A DNA stretch of 63,669 nt, filler included, from Pelomyxa schiedti (lineage: Eukaryota; Protista; Evosea), in the NCBI GenBank assembly GCA_020536535.1. It is 5 parts of 5 records of this genome, joined end to end, with 100 filler letters (N's around TTAATTAATTAA, not from the genome) between each part and the next. Parts side by side here need not be neighbours in the genome. Positions count along the whole stretch, not along the records: positions 19,036 to 40,504 come from JAHLWZ010001072.1; 4 more parts are not named here. One strand, 5' to 3'. The notes beneath the pieces are model-generated. The model ran no database searches. It was not told the DNA's origin and worked only from the letters and a program-made list of their open reading frames with translations. Of this stretch, positions 22,001 through 39,025 are shown piece by piece. Each line of letters opens with the position of its first letter. Within the stretch, counting starts at the first letter, position 1. The translations under genes were made by a program, and so were the position numbers.

Positions 22001-24868
22001 GTAACAATGACGGTCATGAATGAGGGGAAAGTTCTTTTAAATGGTTTGCAGGGAAAAACTATGTGCAAACTTACTGTGGGAACCACAACAATTCTTGTGC
22101 ATTCTCCCTCTCATCCAATTTGTTCAGTCCATCAATGACCACAACCTCTCTCCCAGTTAGTTTGAGAATGGAATTTAACTCGAACACACAATATGGCGGT
22201 TGTTGACATTAGCCACGGAAAGATTCGATAGCCAAGTCACAAACGCTAGTGGAGCTGCTGTTTGGTCTGTTGGAAGTTCTACAGGTGCCGCAAGTTGTTC
22301 TGAGATCTAATCTGTGTAAGGCAATGCTAGTAGAAGAAAAGAGACCAGTCGCATAAGTCGGCCAAGCAGGAAAGCATAGTTAGTGGATGCTGGGGAGCAG
22401 CCGATGTAATGTAATGCAATAACATCCTCTGGGTGGTGCTCCTAGAAAAAGTGTGAGGCATTACGGATAAACAACTGAAAAAAGTACCTTATGTCTCATA
22501 ACCCAGTTAGCAATTAAAGCAGACTTGCCACTTCCACCCTATGATAGATTGAGCTCAAAAAAATTTTCCCTCAGAAAAACCTCTCCGACAATAACCATCG
22601 GCAATGCTTGCTCGCTTGAAACGAATTTATCAAGCTCCATGAAGTTGTTTTCATTGGGTAAATAAACCCGAGTAAGGTTGCGCGAAGTCAACTTGTGTCG
22701 AAGGTCTTCCCGCTCTTCATCACTTAGAGAAATACCCTAGTTAAATGGTGAGAAGTGATCAAAATGAGTAGTGAGGAACCTCGGGATATTTCTTGTTGAC
22801 ATACTGCTTAAGATCTTCATACATGAAGTCGGCCATCTGATCATGCCGAAGGTAATCCTTAACAGGATTCCCGGACTTGTGAATATCTGTCTTAAGGGCA
22901 GCTAGTTTCCTGCTTGCTGTGGGACCTTCAGCAACATAGATGTGCCTGTGTTCTTTCGGCACTTCCTCAATGAAGTATGGGTCCCTTAGGTAGAACCAAC
23001 CAGGTTTAGTGGATCCATCATATTTGTGTCCGAGAAGCTGAAGTGAGACGTGAGCAAACTCTGAGATAATGATATTATAAAGAGCAACCATTCGCATTTC
23101 CAGTTCCGTTACACTACGATCTCGGAATTCATTAATCCAAGGGAACTCACGAGCAGCAAGATCAAATGATCGGCTGAGGAGATCATTATTACTTGTGTCT
23201 CCTTCATTTGAAATAGCCCAGCCATATCGCTCACCATAAAGACCAAGGAAGACGTTTGACTTCTCAACTTCCCTAAGGCACATTAGCAGCATGGTTGCTT
23301 GCTCACTTTGCGCTCCTGTCACACCCCTGGGACAAAGGTCAGCAATTGAAAGAAAAAGAGAAGAAGTACCATCGGAGATCCACATAGCTGACAGCCACAT
23401 CCAAAGACATGCATAGCTTACGAATCTTGGGAATTACATATTTAACCTTGATGAAGTTAGACGAAGAAAAGAAAAGAAAGTACACACAATCTTTTCTCTC
23501 TCTTCTTTCATATCCCTGAAGGGGCTGGAAATGAATATCCTTATTTCCCTCTCAAACTCCTCTTGCTTGGCCGGCCTTGGCTTTTCTGTTTGCACAATTT
23601 CTTGAATTGCAGCCTGCAAATGTAGGTGAATGAGGAAAAACGTTACATGAGCCCAACTTTATCTTCTATGCTGGGTTCTTCCATGATTTTCATGTCAGTC
23701 AGCTGGGCAAGTTGTGTTCGTAAATCAATTTCAGTTTGTTGGATGTTCACAATAGAACGTCTAACATTCTGAAGTTGCCCACGCAGTATTGATATCTTTT
23801 AAAGATTGGTATTAAAACCAAAAAAAAAAAAGTGTGAAGAACCTTTTGCTCCACAGACTGGGAAAGATGGCCAGCGCCAGAATCTTTGGAAAATGAATGA
23901 AGTTTTTGGGAACAAAATTGCTTACCATAAAATCTGAATTCCATGGGAAACCCATAATGCCGACCGTTGTCATTTGTTGCATGGATTGGTACAGTACCTG
24001 GTGCCGCACTATCCGGAATTAACGGATTAGTTTTTACAATATGTGTTAAGTAATACGTACACGCAAGGTGGAATGCTCACAATCACAGAGGTGCTACTGT
24101 GGAACTCATACTCCGTTGCAGTAACAGCTCCAACTTTCAATTTGAAACCAGGGCCTGGCCTAAAGTTGAGTCCAAAAACGGCGAGTCTGAAGTCACCGGT
24201 GTTGGGCCCTGTGATCGTTGTGGGACTCAGCAAAAGGATATGGCCAATAAAATAGAATGAAGAAGCAACCTGAAGTAGGCAAAACCATGGTTATTGTAGG
24301 TACTGGAACTGGGCCCGTTAATGTTGGAACCACAGATGCAGGTGCTGCAGATGACACCGAAGATGTAGTTGCCACACTAACAACAGATAAGGCATCATCC
24401 TCTGTGGGAGTCACAGGTGGTGGGGGTGCCTTGGGCTTTGGAGGCATTTTTTTGGCCCCTCTGGTTTTATCCTGAACCCAGGTTTCAAGTACCGCTTGCA
24501 TTGCGGGATTTTTCTTTAAGATAGCTTGGATCTTAAAAGAGTTGCTCTTCAAGTCCTCAGGGCGAACCACAATATGTGTCACCTACGTCAAAATAGGCAT
24601 GGTTTGCATGCAGCACTCATGAGGAAATACGGCCAAAATAGGGGGGAAAAAAAAGCACCCAAAATAATAATAATCATAATAATAATGTGCCAACTCAACA
24701 AAGTCGCGAAAGCGGTTAGAATTGTACCATTTTCGAAGGCATTGACAAAACTTCTCCACCATAGTCACGTATTGTTTGGGTTAGTGCCTTCTTTGAGGGT
24801 GCAGGCAGATCCAAGAGAAAGAAAATATGGTCACTCAGGGCGTACTTCTCCGTAGGCGTACCAGCCAT
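19076..24868 (-). CDS. BRCT - IPT/TIG - DUF4062 - STAND/NACHT-like NTPase - TPR repeats - polyproline - WH2-like protein (NPHP3/TTC41-like core)
   Basis: BRCT: TIRDYGGEVLSMPSKM/VTHIVV..KIQAI..AVLETWVQD. IPT/TIG: LSPTTITGPNTGDFRLAVFGLNF. DUF4062: EIRIFISSPFRDMKEERE..CLREVEKSNVFLGLYGERYGW. Walker A split by an intron: VIVGE/GGSGKSALIANW. TPR: LEIREISLGPNHSSVAQSLEN, DLKRAIEIRTQLFGK. Then poly-Pro runs and EELQKTSSLHHVTEASDRSSA. ATG 24868, stop TAA 19076-19078. Confidence 0.85.
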
Positions 24869-25804
24869 TTTACTTGTCGCAAAGGTTTTTCGTTATTTGC
24901 TTGGTTTTTTTCGCAATTCGTTGTTTTTTCCTGTTTTTTTTATTGGCCTCTTAAAAGGCGCTGGTTAACCGAAAAAAACCGGCGAGATCTCGGTTCAGTC
25001 TTCCCACTGTAGTGTTCATGGTAACGGGGGACCAACTTAGTTCCAAGCGAGGGGCAATACGAGCTGTACTCCTGTACGCACTGGGCGAGAATAGTTCAAG
25101 ACTTGGTGGGATTAGACTTTGAAAGAAGTACACGACACGCGGGAAAGAAAAGGGTACAAGCTACCAAAAAAGAAGGTTTTTTTTAGTTAATGGAGTGCCT
25201 TACCCCAAATTGTGGGATGTCACAAGGTGGGGGTGTCCACATTTCGGCATTGCGTCGTGTGTTGTGTGGCACAATGACGATATTGTGGGGGCGATTTTGA
25301 TGTGCAGGTGACTACTGTACGTGTTTTGGGTTTGAGAAACTGCGCATGAGAACGCGCAGTTGTCGGTTGGTCTGGGGTTTTTTAGGCCTTGCCGGCGAAT
25401 CTGTGTGCAAGGTAGCCAAGCACAGCCAAGACGGCGACGATGAAAGCAAAAACGAAGAGGAGAATGGCAATGATGTCTCCAGCGCCCATTTATGTGTAGG
25501 TTTGCTTTATTGAGAGTTTTTTCTGTAGTGTGTGAGAAAGAGTGTGGCGTGTAGTAATAAGTGGTGTTTGTTTAGGGGGAGTTAAAGGGGGAAAAAAAAT
25601 TATCCAACCTGTGCTGCGCCGCGCAGGTGTTGCTTGATGGTTTTTTTTTTGTTGTTTGTTTTGTTCTTTCGCCGGGAAACAACAAAGGAAAAGTCGCCCC
25701 AAAAATATGACGAGAATCAAAAGTACCCCCATTCAATTGCAAATCTTGGGGAGGTTACCAGATTGATTGACGATTCATCACTGATCGGACTTTGGGGTTG
25801 GGTG

Positions 25805-26983
25805 ATGACAACTGCGATAGCCACCGACGTTGGGCGTTTATTAGGGGGACGCGGCATATCCCGCTGGTTTCTCGCCCCCGCTCGGGCACACTTATGGGAC
25901 TCGCGCCGTCGACCAAGCGGTCGCCGTTGTGCCAGCGATGTCGTAGCTACGAAAAACGAACCGGCACAAACGAGGACAAGTGAAAAATCAAAAGAACAGC
26001 AACAAAGAGGGCATAATGATGATCATGGACAGGCAGTGATGCTGCCAGGAGCCAAGACTGTGATTGATTACTACAGCTGGGCGTATGTGTGGCCCCGCGC
26101 GGTTCGCTTTTGGAACAGAGACTTGTGTGTGGCTACAATTCTCTGGTTCTGGCACAAGCGGCTCCAAAGGCACATCCACCACCTTCTCGCTCACCCACTT
26201 TTGTGAACAGTGGGAGTGTGCTTGCTGAGTTGTTTTGTGAATCATCCTTGTCGCCCTGGTGCCTGTTCCTTTTCTTAGTCTGGGTGTTTGGAAGAAACCT
26301 ATGTAGAACCTCCCACAACATGACTCTTAACACTGAACTCAGGGAGGTGAGACAAGAGATTCCAGTTGGCAGTAAGGTACTTCAGGCCTCAAATGTTTAT
26401 GGGTCATACACCCAGAATATGGCGAAACACATTGGCCCTCTTGGGACATTTGATGTCATTGACGTAATGCCCATCCAAGTGGAGCAAGCGAAGAAAAAAC
26501 TTCAAGGGCTTCCTCAGGTACATTTATTCTTTAAAATATCGAGTTTAACTTGAACATTAGGCTTCTGCCCGCCTTGCGGATGCAGCCAACCCTGGTGGCA
26601 ATCCTCCCTATGATGCCTGCATAAGCTACTTCTTGTTGCATGAAGTAACCAGTAAGCAAAAGCGTGAGATTGTCAATGCACTTCTCAACCATGTGAAAAA
26701 AGATGGCGGCAAGGTTTGTCCACTTTGCCGAGGTGTGCTTTAAGTCTATTATTAGGTTGTATTCATTGACTATCATCGTATGGCAATGCTGCACCCACTG
26801 AGGCCTGTGATGCACCTCGTGTGGGCACTGTTGGAGCCGTTTGCACGTAATCTCACCCGCTTTAATGTCTGGGATTATGCTGAGAAGCCATACTCCTTCA
26901 CATGGACAAAGAAGACCATGTTTTGGGGTTTGTATCAAAAGACTGTGGCCACAGCAATAGTCCCCAAATATGATGAGCCCTGA
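25805..26983 (+). CDS. rquA: Rhodoquinone biosynthesis protein RquA (SAM-dependent, methyltransferase-like) with Arg-rich N-terminal extension
   Basis: Spliced protein follows RquA end to end: DYYSWAYVWPRAVRFWNRDLCVATILWFWHKRLQ, KVLQASNVYG (RquA-type atypical motif I), IDVMPIQVEQAKKKL, LADAANPGG..YDACISYFLLHEV, GGKVVFIDYH..HPLRPVMHLVWALLEPFA, FTWTKKTMFWGLYQKTVA. Three introns; stop TGA 26981-26983. Confidence 0.93.
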
Positions 26984-27258
26984 TACAACGGTTTTGACGT
27001 TTGGAAAAACAAAAACCAAAACTTTCACACTGTCATTGATTACTACCGGGGTTTGCTAATGCATGTGTACCATCTCGTTCCTTCCCAACAAAGCAAGACT
27101 TGTAGTGCAGTGAAGTGTTGAGACAACCTAGAGCAGTGAGAGCCAAAAAGAAAAACAACAAAGTGAACTTCAGCACAACAAACCTCCTATCATTCAAACA
27201 GTGGTGTTTTCGCGGCGTTTGGGCAAAATCCCCACAAAGAAGAAACCCACACATACAA

Positions 27259-27678
27259 ATGCAACCAATTCCAGAGGAAGCGGACCCATCCAACGACCCC
27301 GCGGTGCAGAAGATACTCAGGAAGAAGGAGAAAGGCAAGCCGCTGACTGTGCAGGAGGCCGGGAAGCTGGGGGGCAAGGGGTACAAGGCCGTCGCGAGGG
27401 CCGCGCAGCTGGGCGGCGAGGAGGACGCGGTGGAGGACATCCTGAGGAAGAAGGAGGCCGGGGAGCCCCTCACGCCCCACGAGAGGGGGAAGCTGGGCGG
27501 GGCGGCGTACAAGGCGGCCGAGAGGGCCGAGGCCACCGGCGGGGAGAAGGAGACCATCGAGGAGATCCAGGAGAAGAGGGACGCCGGCGAGAAGCTCACG
27601 GCCCGCGAGAGGGGGAAGCTCGGGGGGGCAAAGGTGCAGGAGGCATTTAGGCGTGCCAGGGAGGAGTCGGGCGAGTGA
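27259..27678 (+). CDS. Small hydrophilic stress-type protein with three 42-aa repeats containing E.GKLGG (KGG/LEA_5-like)
   Basis: Intronless, very GC-rich 139-aa ORF with repeats ILRKKEKGKPLTVQEAGKLGG / ILRKKEAGEPLTPHERGKLGG / IQEKRDAGEKLTARERGKLGG. Confidence 0.7.
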   Translation: MQPIPEEADPSNDPAVQKILRKKEKGKPLTVQEAGKLGGKGYKAVARAAQLGGEEDAVEDILRKKEAGEPLTPHERGKLGGAAYKAAERAEATGGEKETIEEIQEKRDAGEKLTARERGKLGGAKVQEAFRRAREESGE

Positions 27679-31100: not shown

Positions 31101-34100
31101 ACAAATGGCCAACTGAAGTTACAGCTTACTTCCCAGAGTACACCTGTTGTCACAAATGTTTCCATTAAATCAGATGAAGATATTACGTGGACCAAATATC
31201 ACTGGAATGCCAAAATGGTTACTATAAAAATGAATCCGCACCACTGTATGAATTAGTTCTAGACTCTTTCTACTTATTGGACCTTCTCCGAGTTCAAAGT
31301 ATCTCTAAATTTTTTTTCTGTTGTGAACCGCACTCACAATAAACAAAGATATTACCTCCCAGTTCTTGTGCAATAGTCACGAATTGAGATTCCTTCTCGA
31401 CAATGTGCTACAGCATATCACACCCACTTTCCGGGTTTTTTTTGATTACTTTAATGCTCATGCACTATCCATATCTGACAGAACAGCTGTTTCATCTCTA
31501 GTCAGTGTGTACCTACTTTGGGTTTCCACTGGTAGCTGAGTTGTTCTTTTAGTCACTTGTCTATGTGTTACAATTTGTGCCTTCCTCTGGTTTGTCGTAT
31601 TGCTCCGTGGTTTCTTTTTGATTTCCAATGAACGGAATTCTGCCTTAAGTCTATTTGCCGATGTGCCAAAAGTACTGCTTGCTTATGGAATAAAGTCGTA
31701 CAATACTAATTCCCTTCATAGTCAACATTGACTAACATTGTCACAAAACTATCCTCGGAAGAAGAAAGGTACATACCCTTATTCTTTGATATCCCTAAAT
31801 TTCATGTTAGACTGCAAATTGAGAGCAAACAGATTGCCAAAACTACTCAACGAATACCCACACTACTTAAGTTGGGAATCGTATTAACTACCTCTGTTGG
31901 GGTAACATTGGCAATGTGCCTCTGCTTATTTTCTCTGGGTATAGCCTCATTATCAAACAAGGGCGCGCTGACAGGTAATTGGGGAACTTGAGCTTGGGAG
32001 CTAAAAAAAAAAAAAAAAAAGGTCTTGGCGAGACTGGTGATGACATTGTATCTGATGCGTACAATGTACAAATGTTAGTAGGGACTTTATCTCTGTTAAA
32101 TACCGAACTGGTTGTACAAGATGAAACAACTTGGGAAAGTGGCCAAGTATGGGGAAGCTCATTACGCTGAACACTTATTCTTCCCAGCTTCTTACTGGCA
32201 TTTCGTTTGCCTTAAATGCTACCGAGACCAGCCTCTCTCACCTGAGAAACTCCAAAAAGTAAAGTTTCGAAAATTAAAACTTCATTAACAATAATTTCAG
32301 CGAGGAAATGTATAAACTCCTTCACGACCAGCCCTGTCCTGATACAACAGATTTTGAGTGCACTGGGCTGGACAGTCTTCTGACCAAATTTCTTGTGTCT
32401 ACTTCAACTTTCGCTCAACTTCAAAACCATTCCATGCACGATCCCTATTATCTGTTGTCCTGCCAAATATATATGATTTTGGACCCATGGTAAATTGAAT
32501 AGTATTTTCGTTAGTATTAATCACAACTTGACCAAGGTTGCACCAGCTGACTCATGTCGCGGCAGATGTGCCTATGTCATCTGGTAACATGATTACCTAT
32601 GCCAGATTGTTGGCCCTTTTGAGTATTCCCATCGCTATTCTCGGCTATATCTTCTCCATTCCTTTCATTAATTCAGTGAAGCGTGAGCTCACAAGGTAGT
32701 CCTTTCAAGTATATTAAATGGGTCTAATTGGCTTTAGGACCCTGCGGCTTCTCCTTATGGTTCCAGCAGACGTTTTGATGTCCATATCATCCATCCACGA
32801 TTTCCTAGAGAGTGGTTGCACAAATATCACTGCGTCACTTAAGGTTGCCTTCCTTTCTTCGCTCATCTCTAATCTTTACCAGACTAGTACCAGAGACCAG
32901 GAAAGACGCACTCAATCACTTTTAGAAGGCTCAAAAGATGCTGTCCTTGTTACAGATGCTAAGTATGGTAACGTGGTATTCCCATTGACTGATTATGCTT
33001 CAGTGGCGTAATAAGTATTTTCAATCCGGCAGCAGAAGCACTTTTTGGCTACCGTGCTGATGAAGTATCTTTTCATTGGGCTTATTTTACGCTAATCGAT
33101 TCAGGTTTTGGGGAAAGATATTTCCATGATGTTTTCTGAAGAAGATGCCCAACAGCACATGCAAGCTGTTGAGGTTTTCATTTTCACCTTAATTTTTTTC
33201 TTACATGAACCCAGGAATGGGCTGATCTGGCAGTTCGCCGCCATGCAAAAAAAAATAAAAAAAGAAATCTCAGAAAGAGGCATTCCAATAAAGTCACAGA
33301 CATATGTGAAACCTCATTTACCACCAGTTCTGTTTTAGAAAATAATAAAGAATTGTCAATGACCCACAAAGGTGATAGAAAATTTCCCAGTTTCATTCCC
33401 TGATTAACACTAAGTTAGACGGTACATCGATAACAGTGTTGTTGTCCACCTCTGCTTCAAGTTTGAGTGCCAACGATATCGTTTTTGCTAGTTTTATAAA
33501 GGTGCATATACCAAAAACTTTTATCTCCTACTCATTTCAAAAGGATATAAGACAACTTAAAAACCAACAAGCTGAACTGGAGAAGCAAAAACGGCGGGCA
33601 GATGAACTTTTACTAAACGTACTTCCAGCTCCTGTCGTGGAAGATTTAAAGCAGTTATCTGGCTCTGGGAAAGTTGTTGCGCAATTTTATAAAGAAGTCA
33701 CTATACTATTTGCGGATATTGTAAATTTCACGCCTATGGCTAGCTCCATGGATCCCCATGAACTTGTAACTTATATGGTCCCCCATCATTTTTGACATTA
33801 TTCCTAAGGTGAATTTGCTTAATGATCTCTTTAGCCAGTGGGACCAGCTCTGCGTCAAATATGGCATTGAGAAGAGTATGTGCACCCAGAGATTTTGCAC
33901 ACATACTCACTTTTATTCATAGTCAAGACTATTGGGGACGCATTTATGGCCTGTAGTGGCTTACCAATTCCATGTGAAGATCATGCATCACGCATGGTTA
34001 CCATCCCAAGAACTCAAAACAAAAGAAGCTAATTAACCATAGATTGAGTTTGCACTAGCCGTTCTTAGGTCCACTGCGGCCTTCAACAAGCAAAGAGGAC

Positions 34101-34788: not shown

Positions 34789-37700
34789 ATGACGACGTCT
34801 CAAGGGGCAGCCGTTATCTACCAAGTTGCGTATTATCTCCCAACCGCAACATGCAGACACACCTGACCTGTCTCTGAAATTGTGTTTGCTAACACTTATC
34901 TCTATCTCTACGTTTGTATATGCTATGCACTACAGGTTTTCGTGAGGCAGTATGGACCAACTGGCACGTTTGATGATGTCATTGTCGACATGGACAGGAT
35001 ACGCGACGTTGCTGGGGATGGGGCGTACATTCACATTCTGCCGTGCCACCCAACCGGCCTTTTGTTCAGAAAAGGGTCGCTGGGGAGTCCTTATTCTATA
35101 AGGTCATACAAACAACTGGACCCTGCCATTGTTGGGGCAACAGTGAGGGCTAACACTAACACTGGCAGTACATTGCCTGCTTCAAGTGCTAGTTCTACTG
35201 TTTCTACTTCGGCTTCCGCTGCTGCCGTGACACCGGAAGTGAGTGGCTCTGTTTCTAGTGCGAAATGCACTACTTCTGCTGATGGCGTTGGGAAGTTCAG
35301 AGAGCTAGTTGAATGTGCCCATTCAAAGGGTCTGAAAATCATGATGGATGTGGTTTTCGCTCATACATCGAGAGATAGTGACGTTGTAGTGCATCACCCA
35401 GAATGGTTTTACCTGTCTGGGGGGATTCCTGCTCCACGTGTAGCAGAGTGGAGTGATGTTGCTTCTTTTGACTGGGAAGCTGGGGGAGAAGCTCTACGCG
35501 CTTATCTTATCGATGTCCTTATGGTCTGCTCCTTCTCCCATATTAAGTAATTTTACCTAACCAGTGCATGGGTTCTTGGAAATACTCTAGTATTGGGCAG
35601 ACATGGGGGTTGACGGATTTAGGTGTGACGTGGCGCCTGATATTCCCTTAGATTTTTGGGAGAGAGCTAGGAAGACAGTAGCAACAAAGACGCCAAACAT
35701 GGTTCTCTTTTTACTAGGTTGAATAGAGTCTAACCACCATAGCTGTGGCTCGGGGAAACATGGACTTTAGCTGGAGTCGAAAAGAAAAGAAGGAGAGATT
35801 GTCCTATGTATCCAGCAGATAGTGAGATGTGCAGGGCTTTTGATCTCCTGTATGATTACGATTTATACCAGCTCTGGCGTGCTTGTGTGGCAGGTGAAGC
35901 TCCGGTATGGCGATATTTTGAGGGAATACGGTTGCAATCAGCAACGCTGCCACCAGGGAAACATAAAATCCGGTTTGTTGAAACACATGACAAAGATCGC
36001 ATGGCTTCATTGGTAAAATCCAAAGACAAACTTCTTGCATGGACTGCATTTGCAGCCTTTCTACCCGGCCCCTTTTTAGTGTATGCTGGGCAAGAAAGTG
36101 CTGCCATAAAAAAGTTTGTGATGGCCAAGTTACGTTTGCATTTTTAACTTAACGCTTCCCAAAAAGACCATCACTTTTTGACAGAGACCCAGTTGTGTGG
36201 GGACAGTATTCTCTTCAACCCTTTATAAAGTCTTTGACAAACCTCAAACGCTCCTCTGCTCAAAGTGGTCTATTCACGATAGTTTCTGAAAGTGATCCAG
36301 TGATTGCCGTTTGGTCAAACTTGAGAATTGGAGGAACTTCCATTGTTGGTGTCTTCAACATTGACAACAGTCCTGCTGGTAAAAAAATCCATTTACCAGA
36401 TTGCATTCCGAATGGAAAACACCGCCAACTCCTATGCATGCCCAAGTCTTCCCCTGAGATAGTTCTAGTCACTAATGGAACAATGAACACTCCGCAATCT
36501 GCGGTTGTTTTTGAATGCCACATGGACTCACACCCATATTGGTTTCCTTCGCCTTACTTTGAGACAATTTCCAGGAGAAGCTGTTTGCGATCTCAACCAG
36601 AAGTACCACCACCAAGTACCTTTCTCTCAAACGAATCTCAAATTGCTCTGCCAATGAAAACCGGAGGGAATTCAGTACAACCAGGAAACTTTTGGTGGGA
36701 AAAAACTGTTATTTATGAAATCTACCCCAAGTCTTTTTGTGAGCACCATGAAGTTGCGTCATCTTCCCATGTTGGCTGTGGAAATATAAATGGTGGGACC
36801 TGGTAAGAATAGCCATTCTAAACTTACAACTCATAGGGATACGACACAAACTGAGTACATTGCATTCCCTTGGAATTGAAACTCTGTGGCTCTGTCCGGT
36901 CTTTGCATCTCCCTACTTAGATGGTGGTTATGACGTAAGTGACTACAAGAGCATCAATCCCCTTTTCGGGACCCTTGAAGATATGGAGAATCTGATTGCA
37001 GAACTTCACCAGTTAATTTACTTCCCAAACACTTATCTGTTGACCCTAATTCCCGTAGAAAAAAAATGAGACTGATCTTGGATTTGGTGTTGAATCATAC
37101 TTCTACAGAACACCAATGGTTCAAGGATAGTAGACTGAAGAGGAACGGACATGATGACTGGTACATTTGGAAAAAAGGTTTACCCAACAGGTACCCCTCG
37201 ATAACCCTATTTGGGATAACAAAAAATAACAAACAGGCCACCAAACAACTGGGTATCGGTTGCAGGCGGGCCTGCTTGGACATTTGACAAAGAACGGGGA
37301 GAGTGGTACATGCATACCTTTGCTACCTTTCAACCCGATCTGAACTATAGACATCCTGCCGTAGATTTCCTTTTTTCATATTATTCCCATTCATCTGTTA
37401 AGGTAAAAGAGGCTATAATAGAGCAAGTCTCGTTTTGGATTAAAAAAGGAGTTGATGGATTCCGCCTAGGTACTCACTCTTTTGCCCCCTTCTGACTGAC
37501 TTTTTTGCCCTAGATGCCTTGAAGCACATCTTTAAAGTACTATTCCTTTTTCCCACTTCAAAGAAGTAGTCTCACTCTCTTCTTAAGGATGCCTTTCTAC
37601 AAGATGAGCCAATTAACCCCGAGAATCCTCCAAATGGTCAACCGTTCTTATACAAGCACCTAAATCACCTTCACACTACGAATTTGCCAGAAGTAGAAGC

Positions 37701-39025
37701 TACAACCTTTCCATGGAACTGCTAACTCCTGTACAGGTGCATGAATTCCTTCAAACTTTGCGTCAACATGTTGGGGAAGAAATATGCTTAATGGGTGAAT
37801 GTTGGCAAGACTGGGACAGTGTGATTCCGTATTTCGGGCAGGCCACTCAAAGGGAGTGTCACCTCATGCTCCACTTTGGTCTGATTGGGATGAACAATAT
37901 CTCTGGGCAAAAGTTAATCCAACTAGTAGAAACCTCAGAGAAATACAAAGGTTTGTGTAAAAAACTGGGTTTCCTTGCATTGATGAAAATCAAAGATGTG
38001 ACACCAGTATGGGCAATTGGGAGTCATGATGTTGACCGTGCCTGGTCCAGATTTGGCCCCCAGAAGGCATCCCTGGCAACTTTGGTACTACTCACTCTGA
38101 GAGGAGTCCCCATCATTTACTATGGAGATGAGATTGGCCTCAAAAATTACCAACCCCCAACAAACTCCTCATCACCCGCGCTTCCTGATGCCCGCTATGC
38201 CTTCAGAACTCCAATGCAATTTGATACAAGCCCAAATTCTGGCTTCACCAAAGCACCGCGTCCGTGGATTCCACTCGGCCCTGATTGGAAAACCAGCAAT
38301 GTAGAGTCTCAAACTGGGAGAATGGACTCTACCCTAGAACTACATCGGGCTCTCATACAGCTTCGCAACACTCACCCCTGTTTACACATGGGACAGTGCA
38401 AGATTCTACCAACAGGTTATTCAGCTACTAACATCTTTCCCTTCGATACTGAAATGTACCAAACGAAAAAAAACTCACAGGAAAGGGAGGAAAAACAGTT
38501 GCATATTCTCGAATTCACGGAACAGACAAAATCACCGTTATCATCAATTCCAGTGCCTCGCCAACAACAGTGCCCCTCGCTCCTCTTCTATTCCCACAAT
38601 CACACTCCTCGGCATCCGCAACAACAACAGAACACGTCCCACAAGTGCATGTGCTGTTGTCATCCCGATGCGTACACCCCAAACCCATAACTCTGAACTC
38701 GCCATCCATCTCCCTGGGCCCATGGGAAGGCATCGTCCTCACCGCCGATTCCGCTGACGTTTCTAATGATTCTGCAGCACCCCAAACAGCAGTCACTACT
38801 AACAACACAAAAACCAAGCCCATAATCCACTCCAACACAGCTCCTCCGCCAACTAAGTCACACTCAACAACAACAGCTTCAACAACCACAACAACGTCAT
38901 CAAAGAAAGCAACTGCTAAAGAGGATAATGTACATGGTGAACCACCAAGTAGTGAGGGAGTGCCAAAACCTAGTGGTTTCACTATTGAGGAGCCACACAA
39001 GAGGAAGCACAAGAAAAAAACTTGA
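34789..39025 (+). CDS. Tandem double GH13 protein: alpha-amylase-like domain fused to oligo-1,6-glucosidase/alpha-glucosidase-like domain
   Basis: Domain 1: RKGSLGSPYSIRSY, GVDGFRCDVA, WLGE, FVETHD. Domain 2: WWEKTVIYEIYPKSF, WLCPVFASPYLDGGYDVSDY, DLVLNHTSTEHQWF, GVDGFRL/DA, MGECW, GSHD, LRGVPIIYYGDEIG, FRTPMQF. ORF 36195-36806 runs in frame from domain 1 into domain 2. Confidence 0.9.

What the first reader, a model, noticed from the sequence alone, without database searches (positions are those of the whole stretch)
25805..26983. Intron-containing rquA with a putative organelle-targeting presequence
Seen: full-length RquA-like protein, three spliceosomal introns, and about 80 extra N-terminal residues whose first half is Arg/Ser/Ala-rich and nearly acid-free (GRLLGGRGISRWFLAPARAHLWDSRRRPSGRRCAS). 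Known: RquA converts ubiquinone to rhodoquinone, enabling fumarate reduction; it is bacterial in origin and has reached several anaerobic protists by lateral transfer, typically targeted to mitochondrion-related organelles. Inference: this organism runs RQ-dependent anaerobic electron transport in an MRO and needs a ubiquinone source, either its own or from prey/symbionts. The introns exclude bacterial contamination.
Basis: partly seen in the sequence, partly recalled or inferred. Interest (0 to 1): 0.74.

Follow-up and report, generated by a model that had tools for sequence, protein, structure and literature searches.

The report
Published Pelomyxa schiedti rquA gene

Summary
On the + strand, 25805-26983 encodes a 306-residue RquA in four exons.

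- **Family:** all four exon pieces hit the NCBIfam RquA equivalog NF038261 in colinear order.
- **Introns 2 and 3:** 43 and 42 nt, GT-AG. Spliced contigs in three runs, two of them recorded as single-cell RNA, show them removed.
- **Intron 1:** 26170-26342, 173 nt, with a GC-AG boundary. RNA contigs do not cover it. It is supported by homologue alignment and by the best HMM score among the in-frame alternatives.
- **Identity:** the spliced translation reads identical to Pelo_16019, "rhodoquinone methyltransferase (RquA)", in Table S2 of Záhonová et al. 2022 (PMC8887013). That table already lists mitochondrial predictions and a cleavage site at 42-43.
- **Phylogeny:** it groups with Mastigella eilhardi and Mastigamoeba balamuthi RquA at 100/99 support.
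- **RquA hallmarks:** the degenerate motif I and both SAM-binding aspartates are present.

Rhodoquinone-dependent fumarate reduction in the organelle, and ubiquinone taken from prey, are published hypotheses for these amoebae. Neither has been shown experimentally in Pelomyxa. Verdict: real, correctly interpreted, already known.

The parts
25805..26169 (+). rquA exon 1 (start ATG 25805; residues 1-121 plus two bases of codon 122)
   Evidence: The ORF and the spliced translation read identical to published Pelo_16019. Residues 88-126 of the exon-1 reading frame hit RquA profile positions 7-45.
25805..25930 (+). Predicted N-terminal targeting presequence, residues 1-42
   Evidence: It holds 9 Arg/Lys and 2 Asp/Glu, and RRC|AS fits a processing-peptidase site with Arg at -2 and -3. 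The published table gives mit 0.8, mit 0.86 and cleavage at 42-43. Its amphipathic moment is not above shuffles of the same composition.
25931..26065 (+). Hydrophilic linker, residues 43-87, between the presequence and the RquA core
   Evidence: It has no counterpart in Mastigella or in the bacterial homologues in the alignment. It lies outside the NF038261 match.
26170..26342 (+). Intron 1, 173 nt, GC..AG, phase 2
   Evidence: The donor GCACAT parallels intron 2's GTACAT. The junction matches homologues. This model has the best HMM score among the in-frame models. It is the published gene model. No RNA contig covers it.
26343..26517 (+). rquA exon 2, holding motif I VLQASNVYG (26377-26403) and Asp162 (26461-26463)
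   Evidence: It hits RquA profile positions 41-98 at 54.3 bits. Motif I columns are invariant in 12 homologues.
26518..26560 (+). Intron 2, 43 nt, GT..AG, phase 0
   Evidence: Contigs in runs X3, X4 and X5 skip it.
26561..26713 (+). rquA exon 3, holding Asp187 (26579-26581) and FLLHE
   Evidence: It hits RquA profile positions 102-149 at 38.1 bits.
26714..26755 (+). Intron 3, 42 nt, GT..AG, phase 0
   Evidence: RNA-run contigs X3 and X4 skip it.
26756..26983 (+). rquA exon 4 with stop TGA at 26981-26983
   Evidence: It hits RquA profile positions 151-217 at 75.9 bits. It is 69% identical to Mastigella eilhardi RquA over this exon.

Best explanation
This is the nuclear rquA gene of the anaerobic archamoeba Pelomyxa schiedti, published as gene model Pelo_16019. 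It is transcribed and spliced, with three short introns, one of them GC-AG. The 306-residue product has three parts: an Arg-rich presequence of about 42 residues, a hydrophilic linker of about 45 residues, and a complete RquA core. By homology the core is the Mn2+-dependent enzyme that uses S-adenosylmethionine as an amino donor to convert ubiquinone to rhodoquinone. The likely mechanism (inferred) runs as follows. The presequence takes the protein into the hydrogenosome-like mitochondrion-related organelle, where it is cut near residue 42. There it makes rhodoquinone. ETF dehydrogenase reduces the rhodoquinone, since complex I is absent, and complex II re-oxidises it while acting as a fumarate reductase that produces succinate. 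Shown here: the gene structure, splicing of introns 2 and 3, family membership, and the archamoebal clade. Inferred: import, catalysis, the electron path and the source of ubiquinone.
For: - **Identity:** the spliced translation reads identical to the published Pelo_16019 RquA sequence.
- **Family:** all exons hit the NF038261 RquA equivalog colinearly. The whole protein scores 269.9 bits against an HMM of 41 non-archamoebal RquA. Its closest relatives score 229-300 bits on NF038261 and no more than 39 bits on the UbiE, MenG or other methyltransferase models listed.
- **Phylogeny:** Pelomyxa + Mastigella 100/92, plus Mastigamoeba 100/99.
- **Splicing:** contigs in three runs (X3 and X4 recorded as RNA, X5 of unrecorded kind) show introns 2 and 3 removed.
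- **Catalytic residues:** motif I VLQASNVYG, Asp162 and Asp187 sit in invariant or near-invariant columns. The two Asp are 25 residues apart, as are R. rubrum D118 and D143, whose double mutation abolishes rhodoquinone synthesis (PMC9814641).
- **Presequence:** net charge +7 with an RRC|AS site, and published predictors call it mitochondrial.
- **Context in the literature:** Pygsuia RquA was localised to its organelle, and all full-length eukaryotic RquA have predicted targeting signals (PMC5953543). P. schiedti has complex II, ETF and ETF dehydrogenase but no complex I (PMC8887013).
Against: - No RNA contig covers exon 1, intron 1 or the start codon.
- An in-frame ATG lies 56 codons upstream at 25637.
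- The amphipathic moment of the presequence is no higher than in shuffles of the same composition: 1121 of 2000 shuffles reach it.
- One of the published predictors called the protein cytosolic.
- I found no statement that RquA was among the proteins localised in yeast, nor any rhodoquinone measurement in Pelomyxa.
- The whole spliced protein could not be handed to the NCBIfam scan by reference, so the 202-bit figure is a rough sum of the exon pieces.
Confidence: 0.88

Rival explanations
1. The protein is a genuine RquA, but the N-terminal extension is not an import signal. The enzyme would then act outside the organelle, or be membrane-associated elsewhere, or translation would start at another codon.
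For: The amphipathic moment is not above shuffles. One published predictor says cytosolic. There is an upstream in-frame ATG at 25637, and the 5' end has no RNA cover. The authors warn that archamoebal targeting signals behave unreliably in yeast.
Against: Most published predictors call it mitochondrial, with a cleavage site at 42-43. Mastigella and Mastigamoeba RquA also carry Arg/Ala-rich leaders with a similar SRxxFA core. Pygsuia RquA was localised to its organelle. The partner enzymes complex II and ETF dehydrogenase are predicted to be in the organelle. The 56 codons upstream of 25805 hit no family and start in a T-rich tract.
Confidence: 0.08
2. It is a UbiE/COQ5-like or other class I methyltransferase that merely resembles RquA and makes no rhodoquinone.
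For: RquA descends from UbiE-like methyltransferases (PMC5953543). The nearest solved structures are UbiG/Coq3-type O-methyltransferases. Catalysis was not tested here.
Against: At E of 0.1 or better the exon pieces hit NF038261, plus one marginal NodS match (E 0.09), and no UbiE or MenG model. The RquA-specific motif I VLQ..VYG replaces the GxGxG loop. The protein sits inside a 100/99 clade with named RquA of Mastigamoeba and Mastigella. Its relatives score 229-300 bits on the RquA model and no more than 39 bits on the UbiE, MenG or other methyltransferase models listed. The PDB matches are weak, at E 1e-5.
Confidence: 0.02
3. It is a bacterial contaminant or an assembly artefact in a single-cell genome.
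For: The data come from amplified single cells that contain prey and symbionts.
Against: There are three introns, and contigs in three runs show two of them spliced out. The nearest relatives are other Archamoebae, not bacteria. The flanking genes on the same 21-kb piece look eukaryotic and are split, namely the alpha-amylase-family gene and a guanylate cyclase piece. A 14.5-kb DNA contig spans the locus.
Confidence: 0.01

Closest known systems
Pelomyxa schiedti Pelo_16019, 'rhodoquinone methyltransferase (RquA)' (Záhonová et al. 2022, BMC Biol 20:56, Additional file 1 Table S2)
   Same: It is the same gene. All 306 residues of my spliced translation read identical to the published sequence.
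   Different: Nothing differs in the protein. This report adds the genomic exon and intron coordinates, the GC-AG nature of intron 1, and independent support for introns 2 and 3 from public run contigs.
Mastigella eilhardi RquA (EukProt EP01105, P0002) and Mastigamoeba balamuthi RQUA (AKA62177.1, P0014)
   Same: They are 65% and 46% identical over the full length. They share motif I, both Asp residues, the C-terminal HPLR/LEPFA/LYQK blocks, and Arg/Ala-rich leaders with an SRxxFA core. The three form one clade at 100/99 support.
   Different: Pelomyxa has about 17 extra residues at the very N-terminus and a hydrophilic linker of about 45 residues that Mastigella lacks. Intron positions could not be compared because the M. 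balamuthi locus was not retrievable.
Rhodospirillum rubrum RquA (biochemically characterised; PMC9814641)
   Same: It belongs to the same family model (NF038261). It shares the disrupted motif I and two Asp residues 25 apart, corresponding to D118 and D143.
   Different: The bacterial protein has no introns and no targeting leader, and its first ~40 residues are dispensable. The R. rubrum sequence itself was not in hand, so the residue correspondence rests on spacing and column conservation.
UbiE/Coq5 and UbiG/Coq3 quinone methyltransferases
   Same: They share the class I SAM-dependent fold. The RquA profile matches UbiG structures 4kdr, 4kdc and 5dpm over profile positions 92-198 at E 1e-5.
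   Different: The similarity is only weak. In RquA motif I is VLQ..VYG rather than GxGxG. RquA transfers an amino group from SAM instead of a methyl group (PMC9814641).

Membership tests
RquA (rhodoquinone biosynthesis, NCBIfam NF038261 equivalog) | Score on the family model above the curated cut-off of 175 bits, with the whole model covered | tested here: met
   The four exon pieces cover profile positions 7-217 of 218 colinearly, at 33.8, 54.3, 38.1 and 75.9 bits, a rough sum of 202. The whole spliced protein scores 269.9 bits on a local HMM of 41 non-archamoebal RquA. The spliced protein could not be given to the NCBIfam scan by reference.
RquA (rhodoquinone biosynthesis, NCBIfam NF038261 equivalog) | Altered SAM-binding motif I (VLQ-x-A-x-VYG in place of the GxGxG loop), as described by Lonjers 2012 and Stairs 2018 | tested here: met
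   VLQASNVYG at residues 134-142. V, L, Q, Y and G are invariant columns in 12 homologues.
RquA (rhodoquinone biosynthesis, NCBIfam NF038261 equivalog) | The two aspartates needed for activity (R. rubrum D118 and D143) | tested here: met
   Asp162 and Asp187 lie 25 residues apart, in an invariant and a >=90% conserved column. The requirement comes from PMC9814641. The R. rubrum sequence was not aligned directly.
RquA (rhodoquinone biosynthesis, NCBIfam NF038261 equivalog) | Phylogenetic placement with named RquA rather than with UbiE/Coq5 | tested here: met
   It forms a clade with Mastigella and Mastigamoeba RquA at 100/99. Its relatives score 229-300 bits on the RquA model and no more than 39 bits on the UbiE, MenG or other methyltransferase models listed. 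No UbiE outgroup was included in the tree.
RquA (rhodoquinone biosynthesis, NCBIfam NF038261 equivalog) | Converts ubiquinone to rhodoquinone with SAM as amino donor and Mn2+ as cofactor | not testable with these tools
   This needs an enzyme assay or LC-MS.
Eukaryotic, organelle-targeted RquA (Stairs et al. 2018) | Spliceosomal introns in a nuclear gene | tested here: met
   Spliced contigs in three runs confirm two GT-AG introns. One GC-AG intron is supported by homology and HMM score.
Eukaryotic, organelle-targeted RquA (Stairs et al. 2018) | N-terminal mitochondrial targeting signal and localisation in the organelle | tested here: inconclusive
   Composition (net +7 in 42 residues) and the RRC|AS site fit a targeting signal. 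The amphipathic moment is not above shuffles. Dedicated predictors were not on hand. The published predictions are mostly mitochondrial. I found no localisation experiment for this protein.

The most novel reading that the evidence does not exclude
The three archamoebal rquA genes (Pelomyxa, Mastigella, Mastigamoeba) descend from one acquisition that already carried its targeting leader before Pelomyxidae and Mastigamoebidae split. The gene was later lost in Entamoeba, Endolimax and Rhizomastix, and Pelomyxa gained extra introns, including a GC-AG one. This would turn the 'patchy distribution' noted in 2023 into a pattern of vertical descent plus loss. I did not find this stated in the papers I read.
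Probability: 0.65. Interest if true: 0.2.

Novelty: already known. Interest (0 to 1): 0.1.

Why it matters
RquA is the single enzyme that lets organisms switch from ubiquinone to rhodoquinone and use fumarate as an electron sink without oxygen. Its scattered presence in protists is a textbook case of lateral gene transfer driving adaptation to anoxia. For Pelomyxa schiedti all of this was reported in 2022. The scan's finding therefore confirms that a reader can recognise such a gene from raw sequence, but it adds no new biology. The small additions here are the exact exon and intron map, the GC-AG intron, splice support from public run contigs, and a well-supported archamoebal RquA clade.

Tried and rejected
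- **Word search:** a search with the exon 2 region (ORF 26089-26550, residues 84-143) found no candidate sharing three 5-residue words. This blank reflects the query's design and says nothing about whether relatives exist.
- **Pfam:** the exon pieces gave nothing significant. RquA is recognised by NCBIfam only.
- **Alternative intron 1 models:** three canonical in-frame GT-AG alternatives were built (26127-26278, 26146-26342, 26203-26342). All were rejected, because each scores 14-25 bits lower and adds or deletes residues relative to homologues.
- **Spurious top hit:** P0001, the top hit of the big search, is a 1782-aa ORF of 29 near-identical tandem repeats on a 1.1-Mb ENA contig. Its score is a sum of weak repeat matches, so it is not a relative.
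- **M. balamuthi locus:** the exact-product look-up found nothing, so intron positions could not be compared.
- **Other features on the piece:** the antisense ORFs over the gene and the 56 upstream in-frame codons hit no Pfam family. No Rfam family matches on the piece.
- structure prediction was not run, because the spliced protein has no reference and the fold question is settled by homology. The published sequence was compared with my translation by eye and by three junction peptides, not by a typed full-length string.

Full report
**What is there**

The + strand between 25805 and 26983 carries a four-exon coding sequence. Translating the frames shows exons 1, 3 and 4 in one frame and exon 2 in another. 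Each exon piece, scanned on its own, hits the NCBIfam equivalog NF038261, "rhodoquinone biosynthesis methyltransferase RquA". Apart from one marginal NodS match (E 0.09), nothing else appears at E of 0.1 or better. The hits are colinear: profile positions 7-45, 41-98, 102-149 and 151-217 of 218. The scores are 33.8, 54.3, 38.1 and 75.9 bits against a whole-protein cut-off of 175. Pfam gives nothing significant. The antisense ORFs and the upstream in-frame codons hit no Pfam family. No Rfam family matches on the piece.

**Introns**

Public runs hold this DNA. X1 and X2 are DNA-like assemblies of "organism A". X3 and X4 are single-cell RNA-seq of a "protist metagenome" from the same study. X5 comes from a second study.

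Laying their contigs on 25600-27100 shows a 14.5-kb DNA contig running colinear through the gene. Contigs in X3, X4 and X5 skip 43 nt (26518-26560, GT..AG). Contigs in X3 and X4 also skip 42 nt (26714-26755, GT..AG). The gene is therefore transcribed, and these two introns are removed.

For intron 1 the only boundary that keeps the RquA profile gapless is 26170-26342. It is 173 nt long, phase 2, with a GC donor (GCACAT, compare GTACAT in intron 2). Two results support it:

- **Homologue alignment.** Pelomyxa reads ...CVATILWFWHKRLQREVRQEIPVGSKVLQASNVYGSY. Mastigella reads ...CVATILWFYHKRLQREVKKELPAGAKVLQASNVYGSY, and Mastigamoeba has the same LQREV junction.
- **HMM score.** An HMM built from 41 non-archamoebal RquA gives the GC-AG model 269.9 bits. 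The three in-frame GT-AG alternatives score 255.6, 248.6 and 245.3 bits.

The source paper reports that 1.59% of P. schiedti introns are GC-AG.

**Identity of the organism and the gene**

A literature search for rquA in eukaryotes led to Záhonová et al. 2022, a single-cell genomics study of Pelomyxa schiedti (BMC Biol 20:56, PMC8887013). Its Additional file 1, Table S2, lists "rhodoquinone methyltransferase (RquA), Pelo_16019" with the full protein sequence.

My spliced translation is 306 aa. It reads identical to the published sequence from MTTAIATDVG... to ...IVPKYDEP, including all three exon junctions. The window piece is therefore P. schiedti nuclear DNA, and the finding is this published gene.

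The same table row gives the targeting predictions: mit 0.8, mit 0.86, mit with cleavage at 42-43, cyt, mit, mit, and an overall "+". The paper's text states that RquA was detected and that rhodoquinone would let complex II act as a fumarate reductase. A 2023 comparative paper repeats this. It adds that rhodoquinol is probably regenerated through ETF and ETF dehydrogenase because complex I is absent. It also notes that RquA is patchy among Archamoebae: Mastigella eilhardi, P. schiedti and M. balamuthi only (PMC10711303).

**Relatives**

The word-index search with exon 2 found nothing, so I ran the exhaustive search with exon 4. It returned 102 hits at E of 0.001 or better.

- The first hit, P0001, is a 1782-aa ORF of 29 tandem repeats. 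Its score is a sum of weak repeat matches, so it is an artefact.
- The best real hit, P0002, is Mastigella eilhardi RquA from EukProt.
- P0014 is Mastigamoeba balamuthi RQUA (AKA62177.1), and P0018 is Copromyxa protea RQUA.
- Full-length identities to the Pelomyxa protein are 65% (P0002), 46% (P0014), 39% (P0018), and 34-42% for five unnamed homologues aligned with them.

A maximum-likelihood tree of 44 full-length sequences was built with LG+C20+F+G4 on 238 columns. It places Pelomyxa with Mastigella (100/92) and both with Mastigamoeba (100/99). This mirrors the species relationships, so the gene was present before these lineages split. The rest of the backbone is poorly resolved, as Stairs et al. 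2018 also found.

Named relatives pass the NF038261 cut-off with 229-300 bits. They reach no more than 39 bits on the UbiE, MenG or other methyltransferase models listed. No RquA structure is in the PDB copy. The nearest solved chains are UbiG/Coq3-type O-methyltransferases at E 1e-5.

**Functional residues**

- **Motif I.** VLQASNVYG lies at residues 134-142 (26377-26403). It is the RquA-type replacement of the GxGxG loop, and V, L, Q, Y and G are invariant in 12 homologues.
- **The two aspartates.** Asp162 (26461-26463) and Asp187 (26579-26581) sit in an invariant and a >=90% conserved column. They are 25 residues apart, as are R. rubrum D118 and D143. The D118A/D143A double mutant makes no rhodoquinone (PMC9814641).
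- **Chemistry.** The same paper shows that RquA alone converts UQ to RQ, using SAM as the amino donor and Mn2+ as cofactor. This is the chemistry I infer for the Pelomyxa protein.

**N-terminal extension**

Eighty-seven residues precede the first residue matched to the family model.

- **Residues 1-42.** They hold 9 Arg/Lys and 2 Asp/Glu and end in RRC|AS, with Arg at -2 and -3 of the published predicted cleavage site.
- **Residues 43-87.** They form a hydrophilic linker with mixed charges that Mastigella lacks.
- **Size of the truly extra part.** Bacterial homologues have about 25-40 unconserved N-terminal residues of their own, and the first 40 residues of R. rubrum RquA are dispensable. The extra part is therefore about 45-60 residues.
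- **Amphipathicity.** My hydrophobic-moment test does not exceed shuffles: 1121 of 2000 shuffles reach the observed value. The signal is compositional.
- **Shared core.** A short core, SRWFLAPARA in Pelomyxa, SRPYFALPRA in Mastigella and SRVAFAPLCAA in Mastigamoeba, lines up in the leaders. This hints that the leader is older than the split, but the similarity is low-complexity and weak.
- **Start codon.** An in-frame ATG at 25637 lies 56 codons upstream in a T-rich tract. The published model does not use it, and I could not test it.

**What is shown and what is inferred**

Shown:
- The gene, its exon map, and splicing of introns 2 and 3.
- Family membership and conservation of the catalytic residues.
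- The archamoebal clade and the identity to Pelo_16019.

Inferred, both here and in the literature:
- Import into the organelle.
- UQ to RQ conversion in vivo.
- The electron path from ETF dehydrogenase through rhodoquinone to complex II and fumarate.
- The source of ubiquinone.

Stairs et al. proposed that rquA-bearing protists without COQ genes take ubiquinone from bacterial prey. Whether P. schiedti has COQ genes cannot be told from this window.

**Verdict**

Novelty: already known. Interest: low.

Noticed in passing
window 27115-27678 (+): Just downstream of rquA lies a GC-rich ORF with 2.1 copies of a 126-nt (42-aa) repeat, each holding a ...GEPLTxxERGKLGG... motif. Pfam finds nothing significant. 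The protein atlas gives only weak leads (0.80-0.81) to LEA_5 and KGG 'general stress protein B' clusters. It may be a small hydrophilic stress protein. This is unproven.
   Followed up: partly
window 26550: The DNA contig of run X1 reads G where the window reads T, inside intron 2. It is probably a polymorphism between cells or assemblies.
   Followed up: no
window 25637-25804 (+): An in-frame ATG lies 56 codons upstream of the annotated start, at the start of a T-rich tract. The published model does not use it, no RNA contig covers it, and it hits no Pfam family.
   Followed up: partly
window 34882-38690 (+): Several ORFs in different frames hit the alpha-amylase catalytic domain and the glycogen-debranching glucanotransferase domain: 34882-35550, 35806-36147 and 37713-38690. 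Together they look like one multi-exon glycoside-hydrolase-13-type gene.
   Followed up: no
window 33436-33795 (+): An ORF piece hits HNOBA and the start of the adenylate/guanylate cyclase catalytic domain. It is probably one exon of a larger cyclase gene.
   Followed up: no
window 22759-23400 (-): A 213-aa ORF has a DUF4062 domain at E 2e-7.
   Followed up: no
P0001 (ENA contig of 1.1 Mb, not in the window): The top hit of the exhaustive search is a 1782-aa ORF made of 29 near-identical repeats of about 61 aa (...LRAWDYSVYSYSG...FFWELVLFW...). Its high score is a sum of weak matches to the Trp/Tyr-rich end of RquA, so it is a false relative.
   Followed up: yes
rquA residues 19-28 (window 25859-25888) against P0002 and P0014: The leaders of the three archamoebal RquA share a short core, SRWFLAPARA, SRPYFALPRA and SRVAFAPLCAA. 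This suggests the presequence predates their divergence. The similarity is low-complexity, and significance was not tested.
   Followed up: partly
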